Source: Macrostomum hystrix (taxonomy: Eukaryota > Animalia > Platyhelminthes). Taken from it: a DNA stretch of 64,000 nucleotides. Position 1 is the first letter of the stretch, and each line of letters begins with the position of its first letter. Made by a program: the position numbers and the translations under genes. The DNA is taken from the NCBI GenBank assembly GCA_950097015.1, contig CATNEN010000027.1:558001-622000 (forward strand), given 5' to 3'. Shown in pieces: positions 55,973-64,000 of the stretch. Below the pieces are notes generated by a model that was not told the origin of the DNA, made no database searches, and was given only the letters and a program-made list of their open reading frames with translations.

Positions 55973-56958
<986 letters not shown>

Positions 56959-57469
56959 GACTTGCCTTATTGATTTTATCAAAGCTGCAGTGATTAAAGT
57001 GAAAAACTTTTATTTTTTCTTTGTTATGTTTAGCAACAAGTTAAAACACCAGAAATAATTTGTAGCAAAAAATAATGCATAATAATGCATACTAATATGC
57101 ATGATTATACCGACCTACATACCTACCTACATATCTACCTACAAATAGAGCCTTATATTGAGACCCACAATATTCCAAATGCCACTTAACCTCTATTCAG
57201 TATTTATATCAGCATCATCATTTGCAAGCTAATAGAATTAATTAGTCCTTATTAAGTAGTTCAAATAGTTGTAGTAAACATATATCAAACCTTAAGATCT
57301 ACTAATATGATTCAATAATAATGCTACTTCTTCAAATTAAACATAAGATTTAGAAGTTGAGTGCTATAATAAGATAACTAATGTATTGATAATGTCTCAA
57401 ATGTCTCATTAGGCTTACTTGGCAAATGACAAACAAAAAATAAAAGACAACAAATGCTTAGCTAGCTAT

Positions 57470-57857: not shown

Positions 57858-59919
57858 CTAGCTATCCTTTATGATGCTTTAATCAAGCTGTCTAATGACA
57901 GTAGGGGGGATCCTAAGGCAATAGTTTCCTACAGAAACTTTTTTCAGTGAGATTTGCCAACAGGATTTTTACTTTTTAATTGTATTTTTTCATTTGAAGT
58001 TTCCACTACACAAGTTTTTTCTAAAGGCCCTAATAAACTTTTCAGGCAGAAACATGGGAGATGCAAGAGAAACCTATAAATTATCAACACTAGCTATTAT
58101 AATAAAATAAGCAATTATAGATAGCTTTTGGCTAGGCCTAGTCACAAAAGGTAATATATACATTTTAATAACTAAAAATAGTTCAATATAGTAACAAATC
58201 TATTTACAAAAGAAAAAAAGATATCATAGGGCCTAATAGACAATTGACAATAGGTTATAATTCTAGGCCTAGTTACAAAAGGACAGTATAAAATAAGTCA
58301 ATAAAATATATTTTATAGGGATAGGAACAAAATTTAATAGCAATCAATAGGCCTAATTGGATTAAATAACTTGGGAATGGGATCCTAGTGACTTTGGATG
58401 TAGCAATGTGACAATGTCTAATGTCCACATTGGGATCAGGTTTATGTAAACACAAAAATGGACTGGAAGATATGGAAAACTTGGCAATGGAACTGCAATG
58501 GACTGCATGGGACCAGGGCATTAGTTATTTATATTTTAATCTATGATAGGGGCCTATGGCTTAAAGAGTTGCTGATGTGATGTCTAGTAGTAGATATTAT
58601 GAAATCTCAATAGTGAAACAATTCATAATATGAATGCAAATGTGTCAAATGCGTCAAAAAATATTTTTTGGTGAAAGAGTTGCATGTTTTCGATTTTATG
58701 CATGCTTTTTTCAAGGACCACTAGAAGATATTTTTTCCTTTAATCCTTGTATTTTTTTTCAAAACAAGAGTATCAAAAAGGAAACAAAAATTTTTGACAT
58801 ATCTGATCACTGAGATGATCACATTTACTGGTGCACCGCCATAGACTTTTATCATTAAAGTAAGCTAAATAAAAAACAGAGAAACAACACATTCCATTGA
58901 AAACTATTGTTAGATGCTTTCTTCAAGAATGCAATCGATTTCATTTTTCTGAATTGTATAAATCTGTTTTACTTCATGTTTTATTAGGGGCCTAATTAAG
59001 TTAAAATAGGCCTAAAACAAATATTAACTATCTATAGACATATCTAAGTCATATTATAAAATACATAAAAAATGACTGCTCAGGTTCCACTTTTGTCCAT
59101 TGAGGTCCATTTCGGTGTTTACGCGGACCCATGACATTGTGTTTGCAGGAAATTTCTAGCACATGCAGGACAGCTGGTGTACCCTAGGTGCACCATTTTT
59201 ATAGGTGCAGGGCATAACACATAGTTAGGTGCAGATACATTAGGGCTGCCAGACGGAGGCGGGTTCCAGATGGAGGAGGGCTGCCAGACGGAGGCAGACA
59301 AAGACAAAAAATCGCATTCTTTGCTTCCCTTTTGCATTTTTGTGAACGTCGTGTTTAGGCTATAGCTCACAAGGATTGGGACGTATTAACTTCCCGATTG
59401 ACATTCACATTCACATTCACATTCAAACAAGAGTATTGTAACTTTAAAAATAACCATTCAATTACAGCGAAACTTACAAGATCTTCTGATGCAACTAAGA
59501 TAACGTTCCAAAATAAAAATATTTTCTTTTTGTCAATGCTTAAAAGAATTACACAGCTTTGAAGTATGTTCCTATCTCCGAGGGTATTTTCTTGTACTTT
59601 CATAAAGACACTTCTACTGCATCAATCGCAATGAAAATTTACAAAACGTCTGATGCAATCAAGTTGATTGGATGTGTAAAATTTCAGACTGATTCATGAA
59701 AGCGTCTGCGGGTTATTCAAGGTTAAAGTGTGTTCGTATCTCCGTAGTGTATTTTTGCGAGCTAGTGCAGCTTGACATCAGCTCGCAATGAATTCAAGGC
59801 AATTGATCTTCGCGGGCTTATAAATCAGCCTGTGTAGTAGAAGTAGAAGTAGCTAAGAGGGGCTGTGTGAGTTAATGAGAATTTTTTAGTGTTAAGTTGT
59901 TAATTTAAGTGTCTTATTG

Positions 59920-62900
59920 GGGTGCCAGTCAATTCGGCGACAGGTTAATTCGGCGACAACCAATTAGGCGACAAGTCAGTTCGGCGACAACCAATTCGGC
60001 GACAAATATAGATTAAAAACTGAAAAAGCCCTTTCGAAAACGGGGGTGTATATAACATGGGCTCGCATTGGGCACACTGGGACAACTGGGTTTGAAACAT
60101 TATAACAAAAAATACATTTCTTTACCTTCATCAGCGTTTAATGCAAGAAGAGAAAAATAGAAAAAAAAATTTATTTTCAGAAACGTTTATTTTAAATTGC
60201 TACGTCTTTACTTAATAACTCAAATGTTTTAACAACGATTTTCAACTTCCTTTCGATAAAATATTTGCTTTCAACTGAAAGCTTTACTTTTTCTCGAAAA
60301 GCAACGAGAAAGCTGTAGTAATTACTCAACTTGTTTGCTGGTAAATTATAAAAATGATTTACTTTGTAATGATTTTTGTTTCTAATAGTTTCTGTTAAAG
60401 AAGAAGGCATGGAAAAAAATCCGTGACAACAAGCTGCCAATTACGTATATTTACCAACAAAAGTAAGGATAATACATACGCTGTGGAACACATATAGAGC
60501 TGACTAGAAAGTTAAAACTAATTTGCGGAGCCCAGCAAATAGGAAAATATTTGCCGACTGTTTAGAAAAGAAAAAAACAAAAAAACAGAACCGTAGAACT
60601 ACAAAAAAATGTAGCAAATCCGCACAATTTAAATAAAGTATGCTGAAATGCTAAGTGTGTAAAAAAACTTTAAGACAAAAATATTGAAAACGTACAAGTT
60701 ACATTTCGAAACAAATGTTTTAATAAAAAAATTTAAATGCCTAGCGTACAAAAAATGAATGAAAAATAAATGAAAACCATAATTTAATAGTTGTAAATTT
60801 TACATGCTATGGCGGCCTCATACCCGGTGGGAAAAAAGCTGACGGTCCGCCAGCGCTGCCGCCATCGGCATCGCCAGCGGCCCGGCAGTCGGGATGCGCC
60901 ACGAAATGCTAGCGGCCCGCCGTGGCGGCCCGCCAGTGGCATGCCGCCGCTTTGCCGCCAGAAGTGCTGATATGCCAGCGGCATGCCGCCACTTTGCCGC
61001 CGCTTTACCGGCAGCGCTGGCGCTACTACTACTGCAGTACAGTACTACTACTTGATTTACAGTGAGATGCCCGCTACTTTTCCAGCAGTACTGCTTATTT
61101 TCTAGAGGCATAGTTGCCACTTAAACCAGCAAAATACGCAGGAACGGCAACATTTATCAGACGGCAGCATCGTCTATGAGCAAAATGATTTTAATTCATT
61201 TAAATGATTGTAATTTAATTCACCATTCAATTTCTATTTACTCAAGCAGTCCAGAGCTGTCAAATGATTTATTGAATGCCAACTAAAAAGATGCGTAAAG
61301 CACTCCATTCGGCTAATTTCCTGAAGGCCACTTGTAACAGAAAGATAGTAGGTACGGCAAAGTTTTATTTTTCAAAAATAATTAATTCGACTGACATAAA
61401 GAGGCGCCTTATAAAAGTATACGTGGGCTGATTGCTCATTGTTAGTTAATTGCTTGCAACTCAAAAGTCACAAAAGCAGCGCTCACTCCGGCTCATCGTT
61501 CCTGCTTTTCATCCGGCGCTGTCTGCCACCCATCCTGTCAGCCGCGTTCTTCAAAGCTGCCGCTATAGCTTGCTCAATCTCCCGCTCGTTGCTCTTTGGG
61601 AAAGATTGCAGTGCGGCCTGTTTTGTGACGTCCTCCAACTGGCCGATGAAGCGCAATCGATTGTCAACTCCATGGCGGTTAAACTTGGTTTGCATGTCGT
61701 TGGTCAACAACACGCTGACGGCCGAACGCACGAAAGCCCGCACGGTGGTACCACCGACTTGTCTGATTTGTCTGATCACTGAGGCCTTGAAAGTCATGTC
61801 GTTCAGACGGTTCAGCAAATCCTGAACTTCGTGAGTGCTAGCGCACGGAGAAATTTTCTCGGCTTCCGCGGGCGCATCGTTGCCATCCATCCTGTCGAGT
61901 CTGTCCTCGATTGCTACGACGCGTTTCAGGACGACAGACATCAAATAGTAGACAGAGCCAACCGTTCCAGGTTGCAAACCCTTTCGACGCACCAGAGAGT
62001 CCACGGGTCCGCATTCACCCTCGAAAAGCTGGCGGGGCTGACGTGACGAACTCCTTGAGCGCGCCTGGCTGTGTCCTTTTGACCTATCGGTACTGTGCAC
62101 ACTGCGCTGTTGACCGCCGCCAGACCTCACCGATGTGTCGTCAGGACTCCTCGAACGTGCACTGCCGCGTCGTCTCCGCGATTGGCTCTGCTGCGGACTA
62201 CGCCGCTGATCGCCGTCAGAGCTCACCGATGTGTCGTCAGGACTCCTCGAACGTGCACTGCCGCGTCGTCTCCGCGATTGGCTCTGCTGCGGACTACGCC
62301 GCTGATCGCCGTCAGAGCTCACCGATGTGTCGTCAGGACTCCTCGAACGTGCACTGCCGCGTCGTCTCCGCGATTGGCTCTGCTGCGGAGTGCGCTGGTC
62401 TCCACCAGGGCTCGCCAATGGGCCCCGATTCTCCGAACGCGACTCGATCTGCTGCTGCTTTCGCGACGATCGATCTCTTCTTGGGCTCGTGCTTCTTGAC
62501 CGAGACCACGGATGCAGCTGCGACAAAGGACGCCTCGGCGGTGGTAAAAGTCTTGGCGGCTGAGCAGTGATGGCAGGCGTTGAATGTTGAACCAATAGGC
62601 TGCTGCCCGAAGGACGCTCAGCTTCGGACTCCAAGCCAGAGGTTTCACCAACACAACTGTAGTACAAGTTCTCTGGCGGAAAGCGAAGTCGACCTCCACT
62701 GCAAAAGCGAGGCACCTTCTTCAAAATCTGCTCAACAGACATATTTCGCCGCTTTATGGTCTGGCAGTGCTTCAATGTAGAGAAAAGATCCGCTTCCTGA
62801 GTTGCCACTTGAATGAGGACACCCTTGCATTCGGCTTCCTCGAATTTCACGCGAAGAACTCGCTTGTTACCAGGGTCCGCGATAAGATTCTTGTAGATTT

Positions 62901-63458
62901 CTTCGGACCAATTTGTACAGCAGCTTATAGGGTGTACGGAGAAAGGGTCGTAAGCAGATCCTTTGTCGCTTGGGAAGTAAACCAAAGCAAACTTTATCTC
63001 TTCAAAGTTGAGCATTGCAGATTAAGCTAAAATGAAATTTTGGAAATATCATTTAGAATTTCCCACTTTATTAAATATATGCTGATCCAATGGATCGCAG
63101 TCACTCATGCTCAGGGTGATCACACTGCAATATACTTAGCAGTCGATCCGTTTGTATGTATAGTCTAAGTGAAAACAGGAGCTCGGAAAGGAGCATTACT
63201 TTTTACCTAATTACAACGACACTCAGTCCGACGAGATTGGAGAATAATTATACCCAAATTATAGTAATACTCAAACAAAAACGAATAAATTTCCAGAGAA
63301 TTAGTCACTGATACAAGTCATGTCAAGTTAAACTGTCAATCAAAATACTTTCTTGCAGAACCCTACTATTCGCAGTCGCCGAATTGACTGTCGCCGAATT
63401 GACTTGTCGCCGAATTGGTTGTAGCCGAGTTGGACTGTCGCCGAATTAACTGGAAGCC
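59920..63458. mobile_element. Mutator-like (MULE) DNA transposon, non-autonomous, 3539 bp
   Basis: 24-bp TIRs GGGTGCCAGTCAATTCGGCGACAG and (reverse complement) GGCTTCCAGTTAATTCGGCGACAG. Five subterminal TCGGCGAC-type repeats at each end in inverted orientation. Exact 9-bp TSD GTCTTATTG at 59911-59919 and 63459-63467. Confidence 0.9.
61483..63015 (-). CDS. DUF4806-like (BEN-related) protein, 510 aa, inside the MULE
   Basis: Uninterrupted ORF from ATG. N-terminal FALVYF motif, RS-rich middle with a 3x96-bp repeat, and C-terminus GGTTVRAFVRSAVSVLLTNDMQ..F..EIEQAIAAALKNAADRMGGRQRR resembling DUF4806 (recalled pattern, not searched). Confidence 0.75.
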   Translation of the reverse strand: MLNFEEIKFALVYFPSDKGSAYDPFSVHPISCCTNWSEEIYKNLIADPGNKRVLRVKFEEAECKGVLIQVATQEADLFSTLKHCQTIKRRNMSVEQILKKVPRFCSGGRLRFPPENLYYSCVGETSGLESEAERPSGSSLLVQHSTPAITAQPPRLLPPPRRPLSQLHPWSRSRSTSPRRDRSSRKQQQIESRSENRGPLASPGGDQRTPQQSQSRRRRGSARSRSPDDTSVSSDGDQRRSPQQSQSRRRRGSARSRSPDDTSVSSDGDQRRSPQQSQSRRRRGSARSRSPDDTSVRSGGGQQRSVHSTDRSKGHSQARSRSSSRQPRQLFEGECGPVDSLVRRKGLQPGTVGSVYYLMSVVLKRVVAIEDRLDRMDGNDAPAEAEKISPCASTHEVQDLLNRLNDMTFKASVIRQIRQVGGTTVRAFVRSAVSVLLTNDMQTKFNRHGVDNRLRFIGQLEDVTKQAALQSFPKSNEREIEQAIAAALKNAADRMGGRQRRMKSRNDEPE

Positions 63459-64000
63459 GTCTTATTGCAATTATAGTATTTTTGAACGAAGAAATCAGTT
63501 TTCGCGCATGGGACCAGTTTGTACGAGCGTATGTGACGGTTATTAGTAGGCGAAGGCTTCCCATACAGTGTGAATATTTTAGTTTTTTAAGAAGTGAGCT
63601 TTTTATTCTTTTTAATACAGTGCCTTGCATCTGTCATACGCTCTTAACTGGAAACAGAAGCTGTTAGTATAGGTTGTCTCTTTCATGATTGTGTAATTGT
63701 ACGAGCTACTCTACTCTACTCAAAATTCTACTCAAAGTATATAGAATAAACCAAAAAAGTACGACTTTTCTACCTTTCCGTGCCAGCTCTAAAAATCCTG
63801 GTTTGGGACGGGACCCGGCCGTCCCTCGTGGGACTGTGACAATTCATGCATGGTATACATTACGTTAAAATCCGTTAAAATATACGGAGTAGTGGTGGCA
63901 TCCCCGTGTCTCTTCCATGCCATGCAGTAACCAGCTTTAACCTGTACGTATACAGAAACCTGGTGTGACCAAATCTTTTTGCGTATTTCTTTGTGTTTTT

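What the first reader, a model, noticed from the sequence alone, without database searches (positions are those of the whole stretch)
59911..63467. Pack-MULE-like element carrying an intact DUF4806/BEN-like gene instead of a transposase
Seen: 24-bp TIRs, five inverted TCGGCGAC subterminal repeats per end, and a perfect 9-bp TSD (GTCTTATTG) delimit 3539 bp. The only long ORF is a stop-free 510-aa protein, and I see no DDE transposase motif in it. Established: 9-bp TSDs with G-initial TIRs characterise Mutator elements, and cargo-carrying Pack-MULEs are well known in plants but less described in animals. Inference: a recent insertion (intact TSD) mobilising a putative DNA-binding or chromatin protein in trans, either as an anti-silencing accessory factor or as captured cargo. 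It sits about 3 kb upstream of HP1.
Basis: partly seen in the sequence, partly recalled or inferred. Interest (0 to 1): 0.75.

Follow-up and report, generated by a model that had tools for sequence, protein, structure and literature searches.

The report
Mutator transposon carrying stolen BEN gene
A recently active, transposase-less Mutator-type jumping gene in the flatworm Macrostomum hystrix has swapped its own enzyme gene for a complete DNA-binding (BEN-fold) gene taken from a different kind of transposon, a rare animal case of one mobile element mobilising another's gene.

Summary
Window 59920-63458 is a 3,539-bp Mutator-like element (MULE). It has imperfect inverted ends, five 15-bp subterminal repeats per end and a perfect 9-bp target-site duplication.

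- **Mobility.** A 100% identical second copy lies 49 kb away with a different 9-bp duplication and unrelated flanks. Paralogous copies of the host repeat show the empty site.
- **Autonomous partner.** A sister on contig C7 has identical ends and encodes an apparently intact four-exon PHD-FLYWCH-MULE transposase.
- **The 510-aa ORF.** It gives no direct Pfam hit. A profile of its C-terminal domain retrieves about 1,000 animal proteins, and 33 of 42 retrieved proteins scanned carry DUF4806. Its predicted structure is a BEN fold (Z 10.4 to BEND6).
- **Main correction: the cargo is not a host gene.** The only other copy, on C38 (98% identical, frameshifted), sits just downstream of a decayed CACTA/Mirage-type (CMC) transposase. 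Paralogs elsewhere are paired with such transposases or fill a separate 2-bp-TSD transposon. The cargo is therefore another transposon's partner gene, plus 783 bp of a MITE.

Earlier notes of this scan had reported BEN partner genes in CMC transposons of this genome, but not one inside a MULE.

Verdict: a real Pack-MULE-like chimera and a new variant of a known kind. Interest 0.5.

The parts
59911..59919 (.). Left copy of the 9-bp target-site duplication, GTCTTATTG
   Evidence: Paralogous copies of the host repeat carry this 9-mer once, with the two flanks contiguous.
59920..60041 (+). Left MULE arm (122 bp). It holds the terminal inverted repeat (outer 24 nt, extended arm to 60003) and five 15-bp subterminal repeats (59930-60005, consensus CAATTCGGCGACAAC).
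   Evidence: 99-100% identical to the left ends of the sisters L051, L052 and L053. Repeats shown.
60042..60822 (+). A 783-bp piece (one terminus plus interior) of a separate 1.02-kb MITE, called 'X' here. X has ~50-bp TIRs and 9-bp TSDs of its own. It is truncated at 60822.
   Evidence: At least 8 other copies at 96-98%. Full copies are 1,035 bp, with TIRs and TSDs AATAACAAA and ATATCTCAC.
60823..63140 (-). Captured 2.3-kb segment: 125 bp upstream, the 510-aa ORF and 660 bp downstream. It is 98% identical to part of a decayed CMC-type transposon on contig C38.
   Evidence: Matches C38:33747759-33750269. There are 39 substitutions, and the C38 copy has +193 bp, -2 bp and two nonsense codons. 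Junctions are shown.
61483..63015 (-). Intact intronless ORF of 510 aa. It has a conserved N-terminal domain, an SR-rich linker and a C-terminal DUF4806-type BEN domain.
   Evidence: Paralogs start at the same ML.F.EIK N-terminus. Profile search; 33 of 42 retrieved proteins scanned carry PF16064.
62650..63015 (-). N-terminal domain (about aa 1-122). It is conserved in paralogs and in Hydra, M. lignano and environmental proteins. Its fold is not assigned.
   Evidence: HMM hits from 4e-30 to 7e-6. AF2 pLDDT 79. Best structural match is only Z 3.9, to Tudor domains.
62111..62389 (-). A 96-bp tandem repeat, 2.9 copies, encoding 32-aa Ser/Arg-rich units. The C38 copy has two more units.
61537..61806 (-). 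BEN-fold core (about aa 404-493).
   Evidence: AF2 model pLDDT 94. VIA-align Z 10.4, rmsd 1.6 A over 82 of 91 residues of BEND6 BEN. The top 15 rows are all BEN domains and the next fold scores Z 4.9. Foldseek's top 12 rows are also BEN.
63141..63458 (+). Right MULE arm (318 bp). It holds five inverted subterminal repeats (63375-63452) and the terminal inverted repeat.
   Evidence: 98-99% identical to the right ends of L051 and L052. Repeats shown.
63459..63467 (.). Right copy of the 9-bp target-site duplication, GTCTTATTG

Best explanation
The element is a non-autonomous Mutator-like element (MULE) of the flatworm Macrostomum hystrix.

**Shown**
- Its 122-bp left arm and 318-bp right arm are those of a low-copy MULE family.
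- The one full-length member of that family (C7:4081072-4084352) encodes a 613-codon PHD-FLYWCH-MULE transposase.
- In the window element the transposase gene has been replaced by two foreign pieces. One is 783 bp of a 1-kb MITE. The other is a 2.3-kb segment holding the complete second gene, the 'BEN partner gene', of a CACTA/Mirage-type (CMC) DNA transposon.
- The chimera was mobilised very recently. Two copies are 100% identical and have different 9-bp TSDs.
- The 510-aa protein has a C-terminal BEN fold of the DUF4806 subtype.

**Inferred**
- The family's transposase, supplied in trans, recognises the terminal repeats and the five 15-bp subterminal repeats at each end. It cuts and pastes the chimera, making 9-bp target duplications.
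- The foreign DNA was most likely acquired by template switching during gap repair after excision. The junctions show 2-3 nt of microhomology and no termini of the donor element.
- The protein is probably a sequence-specific DNA binder that, in its native CMC element, reads that element's end motifs.
- Inside the MULE it is most likely a young passenger that may still be expressed. It is probably not a factor that the MULE needs.
For: **MULE identity**
- 9-bp TSDs in three young copies.
- The sister L051 has identical ends and carries FLYWCH (3e-7) and MULE PF10551 (1.5e-12).
- Its four exons total 1,842 nt. All are open and all have GT..AG borders.
- The related family L056 has an intact 607-aa PHD+FLYWCH+MULE ORF.

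**Mobility**
- A second copy on C27 is 100% identical over 3,539 bp, with TSD CTGCTATTT and flanks that do not align.
- The empty site is seen in paralogs of the host repeat.

**Chimeric interior**
- Only 59920-60041 and 63129-63458 are shared with the sister.
- 60042-60822 is the MITE X.
- 60823-63140 matches C38.

**The donor is a CMC transposon**
- L054 1756-3487, just upstream of the C38 BEN copy, is a frameshifted homolog (E 2e-42 and 2e-30) of a 659-aa ORF.
- At C11 that ORF lies 745 bp upstream of a BEN paralog.
- The ORF's Atlas look-alikes (score 0.99) carry PF02992 Transposase_21 and DUF1258.
- A third locus has a BEN gene followed by a transposase homolog.
- A 4.24-kb TIR element with 2-bp TSDs carries another BEN paralog in four copies at >=99%.

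**BEN/DUF4806 assignment**
-.
- The literature link between DUF4806 and BEN comes from 10.1101/2023.12.06.570431 and PMC10789644.
Against: - There is no expression data for the ORF.
- The ORF's intactness could simply reflect youth. pN/pS against the C38 pseudogene is 0.82, which is uninformative.
- The C38 copy is 1.7% diverged and broken, so it is a relative of the donor rather than proven to be the donor itself.
- The CMC assignment of the neighbouring transposase rests on a language-model look-alike search and on motifs I recognise from memory. Direct Pfam gave only weak hits (DUF1258 at 0.0055, RAG1 at 0.0065).
- The C7 transposase is an exon-by-exon model and its activity is untested.
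- The acquisition mechanism is inferred from three junctions only.
Confidence: 0.8

Rival explanations
1. The interior arose by ordinary nested insertions followed by internal deletions, not by template-switch capture. First the MITE X and then a CMC element (or a deletion derivative of one) inserted into a MULE. Later deletions removed the MULE transposase and the CMC ends.
For: The intact terminus of X abuts the MULE arm exactly at 60041|60042, as expected for a true insertion of X. X makes 9-bp TSDs and inserts like a transposon.
Against: No CMC terminus or TSD is present at either border of the 2.3-kb segment. The segment starts 125 bp upstream of the ATG, inside what is intergenic DNA of the donor. 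This route needs at least two precise deletions, whereas capture needs one composite repair event.
Confidence: 0.25
2. The BEN gene is retained because it benefits the MULE. It might act as an anti-silencing or targeting accessory factor that binds the MULE's own 15-bp subterminal repeats, making this a functional two-component variant.
For: The ORF is intact while the C38 copy has 2 stops and 2 frameshifts. BEN domains bind DNA (PDB matches). MULEs elsewhere carry second genes such as mudrB (from general knowledge).
Against: The autonomous sister and all other family members lack the gene. The gene's relatives are partners of CMC transposases, not of MULEs. With only two identical copies there is no signal of selection.
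Confidence: 0.1
3. The cargo is a captured host (non-TE) chromatin gene, making this a Pack-MULE in the strict sense. On this reading C38 is the decayed parental host locus.
For: The DNA directly flanking the 2.3-kb homology at C38 is single-copy in the genome. DUF4806 proteins are annotated as ordinary genes in Hydra, fish and M. lignano.
Against: That flanking DNA encodes a frameshifted CMC-type transposase in the same order and orientation as at C11. Other paralogs sit in TIR elements or next to transposases.
Confidence: 0.05
4. The two copies on C27 are an assembly or segmental duplication rather than independent transposition events.
For: Both lie on one contig 48,944 bp apart in the same orientation. 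The assembly came from pooled worms and had haplotigs purged (PMC10468722).
Against: The flanks do not align at all, and the TSDs differ (GTCTTATTG versus CTGCTATTT). Identity stops exactly at the TIR ends.
Confidence: 0.02

Closest known systems
Pack-MULEs of plants (rice, maize, Arabidopsis), especially KI-MULEs that carry a ULP-like protease gene
   Same: Both have MULE termini with 9-bp TSDs and no transposase. The interior is made of DNA acquired from elsewhere, in more than one fragment. A donor-like copy without MULE ends exists, and multiple copies have distinct TSDs. As in KI-MULE, a whole protein-coding gene is carried.
   Different: This element is in an animal (a flatworm). Its cargo is 2.3 kb with a complete, intact 510-aa ORF, whereas the typical capture is about 300 bp (PMC8277862). 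The cargo comes from another DNA-transposon superfamily rather than from a host gene.
Ssk-FB4 of Drosophila (Tan et al. 2021, PMC8277862). That paper presents it as the only animal Pack-MULE, having found none in 100 animal reference genomes.
   Same: Both are animal MULE-type ends that mobilise a coding sequence in multiple copies with distinct 9-10-bp TSDs.
   Different: FB4 is a foldback element with ~700-bp TIRs and an unknown transposase, and its cargo is a host gene (Ssk). The element here has short TIRs, an identifiable PHD-FLYWCH-MULE partner and a TE-derived cargo.
Animal MULE families: Phantom (FLYWCH-bearing, includes Platyhelminthes), Rehavkus (PHD finger, 9-bp TSD) and Curupira (Schistosoma) (PMC6446971)
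   Same: 9-bp TSD, a MULE DDE domain, and FLYWCH and/or PHD zinc fingers in the transposase of the autonomous sister.
   Different: Which named family this one belongs to was not tested, because no phylogeny was built. The sister combines an N-terminal PHD with FLYWCH.
Two-gene CMC (CACTA/Mirage-like) transposons with a BEN/DUF4806 partner gene, noted earlier in this scan for the same genome. The functional analogue is TnpA/TnpD of maize En/Spm.
   Same: The cargo gene belongs to this partner-gene family. It has the same N-terminal domain and BEN C-terminus, and its C38 relative and the C11 paralog lie downstream of the transposase; at C1/C39 the BEN gene lies upstream.
   Different: Here the partner gene has been separated from its transposase and from its own element's ends. 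It now moves on MULE ends.
BEN DNA-binding domains (BEND6, BEND3, Insensitive, BANP, NACC1) and Pfam DUF4806
   Same: Predicted fold match at Z 10.4-7.0 over the whole BEN core. Profile-level homology to DUF4806 proteins.
   Different: No direct Pfam hit. The protein has an extra conserved N-terminal domain of unassigned fold and an SR-rich repeat linker. DNA binding is untested.

Membership tests
Mutator-like elements (MULE superfamily) | Target-site duplication of 9-11 bp | tested here: met
   Perfect 9-bp TSDs in the window copy, in L055 and in L051. Two older copies show 8/9 matches.
Mutator-like elements (MULE superfamily) | Terminal inverted repeats shared with a member that encodes a MULE-type DDE transposase | tested here: met
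   L051 has identical 22-nt termini and arms of 122 and 330 bp at 98-99%. It carries PF10551 (1.5e-12) and FLYWCH.
Pack-MULE (strict sense) | MULE ends, no transposase, and an interior acquired from elsewhere, with a donor-like copy that lacks MULE ends | tested here: met
   No MULE domain lies inside 59920-63458. The interior matches MITE X and the C38 locus.
Pack-MULE (strict sense) | Captured sequence is a host (non-TE) gene or gene fragment | tested here: not met
   The donor-like C38 copy lies directly downstream of a decayed CMC-type transposase. Paralogs are transposon-borne. The element is therefore filed as Pack-MULE-like, a chimeric non-autonomous MULE.
Pack-MULE (strict sense) | Amplification by transposition (copies with distinct TSDs) | tested here: met
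   Two identical copies with different TSDs and different flanks.
DUF4806 (PF16064) / BEN (PF10523) | Pfam model hit above the gathering threshold | tested here: not met
   hmmscan found 0 families at E<=1 for the ORF, and neither DUF4806 nor BEN for six ORFs from five paralog loci.
DUF4806 (PF16064) / BEN (PF10523) | Homology to family members by profile search | tested here: met
   The profile of 5 Macrostomum C-terminal domains gave 1,056 hits at E<=1e-3 and 172 at <=1e-10. 33 of 42 retrieved proteins scanned carry PF16064, with best E 2e-41. The domain lies inside the matched stretch.
DUF4806 (PF16064) / BEN (PF10523) | BEN fold | tested here: met
   AF2 pLDDT 94. Z 10.4 at 1.6 A over 82 residues to BEND6. 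The top 15 rows are all BEN and the next unrelated fold scores Z 4.9.
DUF4806 (PF16064) / BEN (PF10523) | Sequence-specific DNA binding | not testable with these tools
   Needs EMSA, DAP-seq or a similar assay.
CMC (CACTA/Mirage/Chapaev) two-gene transposons with a BEN partner | BEN-family gene adjacent to, and co-oriented with, a CMC-type transposase | tested here: met
   C11: a 659-aa ORF lies 745 bp upstream of the BEN gene. C38: a frameshifted homolog lies upstream of the BEN copy. C1/C39: a transposase homolog lies ~700 bp downstream of the BEN gene.
CMC (CACTA/Mirage/Chapaev) two-gene transposons with a BEN partner | The transposase belongs to Transposase_21 / the CMC clade | tested here: inconclusive
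   Atlas look-alikes at 0.99 carry PF02992 and DUF1258. Direct Pfam gave only DUF1258 at 0.0055 and RAG1 at 0.0065. The DG..F..S..WP, DSPAR and FPFE motifs were recognised from memory only.
CMC (CACTA/Mirage/Chapaev) two-gene transposons with a BEN partner | 2-3-bp TSD and CACTG-type termini | tested here: inconclusive
   Met for the separate 4.24-kb BEN-carrying element, which has TSDs TA, AG, AG and AT and termini CCCACTGG.... The ends of the C11 and C38 elements were not determined.

The most novel reading that the evidence does not exclude
The BEN/DUF4806 'partner gene' may be a portable module that moves between DNA-transposon superfamilies, here from a CMC element onto MULE ends. The MULE-borne copy could supply or compete for BEN protein in trans, so that one transposon family parasitises or regulates another. 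More broadly, the large lineage-specific DUF4806 expansions in animals (Hydra, Macrostomum, zebrafish chromosome 4) may mostly reflect transposon-borne spread rather than host-gene duplication.
Probability: 0.2. Interest if true: 0.7.

Novelty: new variant of a known kind. Interest (0 to 1): 0.5.

Why it matters
- **Rarity in animals.** Pack-MULEs are a textbook route to gene duplication in plants. A survey of 100 animal reference genomes found none, and presented Ssk-FB4 of Drosophila as the first potentially functional coding case (PMC8277862).
- **What this example offers.** It is a clean animal case with an identifiable autonomous partner, evidence of very recent movement and a complete 510-aa gene as cargo.
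- **Cross-superfamily capture.** The cargo is the accessory DNA-binding gene of a different transposon superfamily. This shows that accessory genes can be exchanged between mobile elements.
- **A route for BEN/DUF4806 spread.** It gives a concrete mechanism by which BEN/DUF4806 genes multiply and could eventually be domesticated.
- **Experimental handles.** The element provides defined ends and a candidate transposase for a flatworm transposition assay.

Tried and rejected
- **Direct Pfam scan.** The ORF and six ORFs from five paralog loci gave no DUF4806 or BEN hit.
- **Word-based protein searches.** The whole ORF and residues 1-130 found nothing. The SR-rich middle probably swamped the words. 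A third search with a two-domain alignment found only 3 proteins.
- **N-terminal domain.** The structural searches (Foldseek on pdb, VIA-align on pdb_via_wide) gave only weak matches, with best Z 3.9 to Tudor domains; the Atlas feature search returned only unnamed hypothetical-protein clusters. I leave the fold unassigned.
- **dN/dS.** The two MULE copies are identical. Against the C38 pseudogene pN/pS is 0.82, which is uninformative.
- **C38 as a host locus.** I first read it this way because its flanks are single-copy. I rejected that reading when tblastn showed a decayed transposase there.
- **MULE-type subterminal repeats around the other BEN paralogs.** None were found.
- **Bacterial-type promoter scan upstream of the ORF.** Not meaningful for an animal gene.
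- **Spliced C7 transposase.** It was examined exon by exon, by reference only. The joined protein was not built or searched.

Full report
**Source genome.** The assembly has 220,453,370 bp in 42 contigs, with contigs of 13,505,968 and 35,345,953 bp. These figures are identical to the published Macrostomum hystrix assembly (PMC10468722). That agrees with earlier notes of this scan. The window is contig C27:558001-622000.

**Observation check.**
- The 9-mer GTCTTATTG occurs at 59911-59919 and again at 63459-63467, bracketing 3,539 bp.
- The outer 24 nt of the two ends match 21/24 as inverted repeats. The arms extend to 84 nt at 86% complementarity.
- Each end holds five 15-16-bp units (TRF period 15, 4.9 and 5.1 copies).
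- The only long ORF is 61483-63015 on the minus strand, 510 aa.
- A degenerate 22-mer of the termini matches 25 times forward and 27 times reverse in the genome. The reversed control matches 2 and 0 times.
- The HP1 remark is correct. A Chromo plus Chromo_shadow gene lies at 55973-56982 on the minus strand.

**The element is a MULE with a partner.**
- The termini define a low-copy family.
- The sister at C7:4081072-4084352 (locus L051, 3,281 bp) has identical terminal 22-mers and the TSD TTATAACTA.
- Its interior carries FLYWCH (3e-7) and MULE PF10551 (1.5e-12).
- The breaks between its ORF pieces are canonical introns. Four exons (L051 1618-1720, 1837-2681, 2777-3139, 3215-3745) sum to 1,842 nt, each open in phase, with GT donors and AG acceptors. 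The first exon encodes a PHD-like finger.
- I examined the exons one by one by reference. I did not build or search the joined protein.
- A C10 copy is 99% identical but has internal deletions of 313 and 213 bp, and its right end is truncated.
- A related family with CATTTCGGCGACA subterminal repeats has an intact intronless 607-aa PHD+FLYWCH+MULE ORF (L056).
- The genome holds more than 60 MULE transposase fragments.

**Recent mobility.**
- A second copy at C27:666864-670402 is 100% identical over all 3,539 bp.
- Its TSD is CTGCTATTT, and its flanks do not align with those of the window copy.
- The window copy sits inside a high-copy repeat. That repeat has ~400-bp inverted arms and 176-bp internal tandem units, so it is foldback-like, with more than 280 matches.
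- At least ten paralogous copies of the repeat have the left and right flanks contiguous. In C34 the sequence reads through a single GTCTTATTG. This serves as the empty site.
- The window has six extra bases (CAATTA) after the right TSD relative to C34. I treat this as paralog divergence.

**Chimeric interior.**
- Only 59920-60041 and 63129-63458 are shared with the sister.
- 60042-60822 is part of a discrete 1,035-bp MITE ('X'). X has ~50-bp TIRs and its own 9-bp TSDs. Its intact terminus abuts the MULE arm, and its other end is cut off at 60822.
- 60823-63140 is 98% identical to C38:33747759-33750269, and nowhere else in the genome apart from the second C27 copy.
- The C38 copy differs by 39 substitutions. 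It has a 193-bp insertion (two extra 96-bp units plus one base) and a 2-bp deletion. It also has two nonsense codons (Y41*, E481*), so it is a pseudogene.
- pN/pS between the two is 0.82, which says nothing about constraint on the MULE copy.
- The three junctions show 2-3 nt of possible microhomology and one inserted base. This is my inference for a repair-type origin.

**The protein.**
- Direct hmmscan gave nothing, and the word-based searches failed.
- The genome has at least 12 paralogous loci at 28-47% identity (most 35-45%), sharing an N-terminal domain and a C-terminal domain.
- A profile of five C-terminal domains, searched against 1.84 billion representative proteins, gave 1,056 hits at E<=1e-3.
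- 33 of 42 retrieved proteins scanned carry PF16064 DUF4806. The domain lies within the matched stretch.
- Named hits are multi-copy uncharacterised proteins of Hydra vulgaris and M. lignano (one labelled 'DUF4806 domain-containing'). Others come from lobster, fish, a nemertean and molluscs.
- DUF4806 has been described as a BEN subtype (Pan et al. 2023, as cited in 10.1101/2023.12.06.570431; see also PMC10789644).
- AlphaFold2 on a 114-sequence alignment gave pLDDT 94.
- The structural matches are BEN domains in complex with DNA. BEND6 scores Z 10.4 at rmsd 1.6 A over 82 of 91 residues. Insensitive scores 9.0 and BEND3 8.1. Fifteen BEN rows come before the first unrelated fold at Z 4.9.
- The BEN core is about residues 404-493.
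- The N-terminal domain (about residues 1-122) recurs in Hydra, M. lignano and environmental proteins that have the same two-domain layout. It has no convincing structural match (pLDDT 79, best Z 3.9).
- Between the two domains lies an SR-rich linker with 32-aa repeats.

**Where the cargo came from.**
- I first took C38 for a host locus, because its flanks are single-copy.
- Earlier notes of this scan say that CMC/EnSpm-type transposons of this genome carry BEN/DUF4806 partner genes. I tested this myself.
- At C11, a BEN paralog with the same N-terminal domain (38% identity) lies 745 bp downstream of a co-oriented 659-aa ORF.
- That ORF's Atlas look-alikes (score 0.99, 233 of 256 shared features) carry PF02992 Transposase_21 and DUF1258. 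Direct Pfam was only weak.
- In the C38 locus, L054 1756-3487 lies immediately upstream of the BEN copy. It is a five-piece, frameshifted homolog of that ORF, covering residues 101-639 (E 2e-42 and 2e-30).
- At C1/C39 a BEN paralog is followed about 700 bp downstream by another homolog.
- Independently, a 369-aa BEN paralog is the only long ORF of a 4.24-kb TIR element. It has four copies at >=99% identity, termini CCCACTGG... and 2-bp TSDs (TA, AG, AG, AT).
- The cargo is therefore the partner gene of a CMC-type transposon. It was taken with 125 bp of upstream and 660 bp of downstream sequence, without the transposase.

**Mechanism.**
- Shown: the ends, the TSDs, the partner transposase, the identical copies and the origin of the interior.
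- Inferred: the C7-type transposase acts in trans on the TIRs and the 15-bp repeats. The conserved core TTCGGCGACA is shared with the related family, so it is a likely binding site.
- Inferred: the interior was rebuilt during gap repair by template switches, first to an X copy and then to a CMC element. Nested insertion followed by deletion is the main alternative for the X piece.
- Inferred: the BEN protein binds DNA. Whether it is expressed from the MULE, and what it binds, is unknown.

**Comparison with known systems.**
- The element works like a Pack-MULE and resembles KI-MULE in carrying a whole gene.
- It fails the strict criterion of host-derived cargo, so I file it as a Pack-MULE-like chimeric MULE.
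- Tan et al. 2021 found no Pack-MULE in 100 animal reference genomes. They described Ssk-FB4 as the first potentially functional coding Pack-TIR, with a median capture size of 224 bp (PMC8277862).
- Flatworm MULEs (Curupira and Phantom members) and the PHD-bearing Rehavkus group are known (PMC6446971). I did not place this family among them.
- I found no paper that describes a MULE carrying a BEN gene.

**Verdict.** Novelty: a new variant of a known kind. Interest 0.5.

Noticed in passing
G000 C38:31381139-31385379 (L080 5449 to L082 128); also C29, C10:~143883-148120 and C2:~3858419-3864558: A 4.24-kb TIR transposon unrelated to the MULE. Its termini read CCCACTGGGAAAAG..., with an imperfect ~34-bp TIR. 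The 2-bp TSDs are TA, AG, AG and AT, and there are four copies at >=99% identity. Its only long ORF is a 369-aa BEN/DUF4806-like paralog. The C2 copy is interrupted by a 1.9-kb insertion, and a Pif1 (Helitron-like) helicase fragment lies nearby.
   Followed up: partly
window 59378-59919 and 63468-64000, continuing to C27:622844: The MULE is nested in a foldback-like repeat. The repeat has ~400-bp inverted arms (window 59378-59778, and C27:622452-622844 on the other strand) and internal 176-bp tandem units. It gives more than 280 matches in the genome, typically as inverted pairs 0.6-11 kb apart (most 3.4-6.4 kb).
   Followed up: partly
window 60042-60822; full copies at L070 491-1519, L069 and L071: A 1.02-kb MITE ('X') with ~50-bp TIRs starting GGGGGTGTATAAAACATGG and 9-bp TSDs. 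It is therefore probably a MULE-type MITE of another family. At least 8 copies are 96-98% identical.
   Followed up: partly
G000 C11:4422011-4423990 (L090:112-2091, minus strand), with L040 and L089: An intact 659-aa CMC/Transposase_21-like transposase lies 745 bp upstream of a 453-aa BEN paralog. A second, divergent transposase-like 488-aa open frame follows downstream (L089:44-1507, minus strand). The ends of this element were not determined.
   Followed up: partly
protein P0007 (M. lignano PAA78730.1) versus window ORF residues 449-510: 59 of 62 residues are identical between the M. hystrix cargo protein and an M. lignano gene model, even though these are different Macrostomum species. This could reflect strong constraint, a shared young transposon lineage or horizontal transfer. 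The M. lignano DNA could not be fetched.
   Followed up: no
window 55973-56982, minus strand: An HP1-type gene in at least two exons (Chromo 7e-19; Chromo_shadow split across the exons). It lies about 2.9 kb from the MULE. There is no evidence that the insertion affects it.
   Followed up: partly
protein P0043 (Phthorimaea operculella KAI5646662.1): A 1,136-aa moth gene model combines three DUF4806 domains with a FLYWCH finger, which is the DNA-binding domain typical of MULE transposases. It is possibly another MULE/BEN association, or a chimeric gene model.
   Followed up: no
protein P0001 (MEE4247133.1, labelled Kangiellaceae bacterium MAG): The best external hit of the BEN-domain profile (E 2e-43) is deposited as a bacterial MAG protein. 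It looks like a flatworm-type DUF4806 protein and is probably eukaryotic contamination of the MAG.
   Followed up: no
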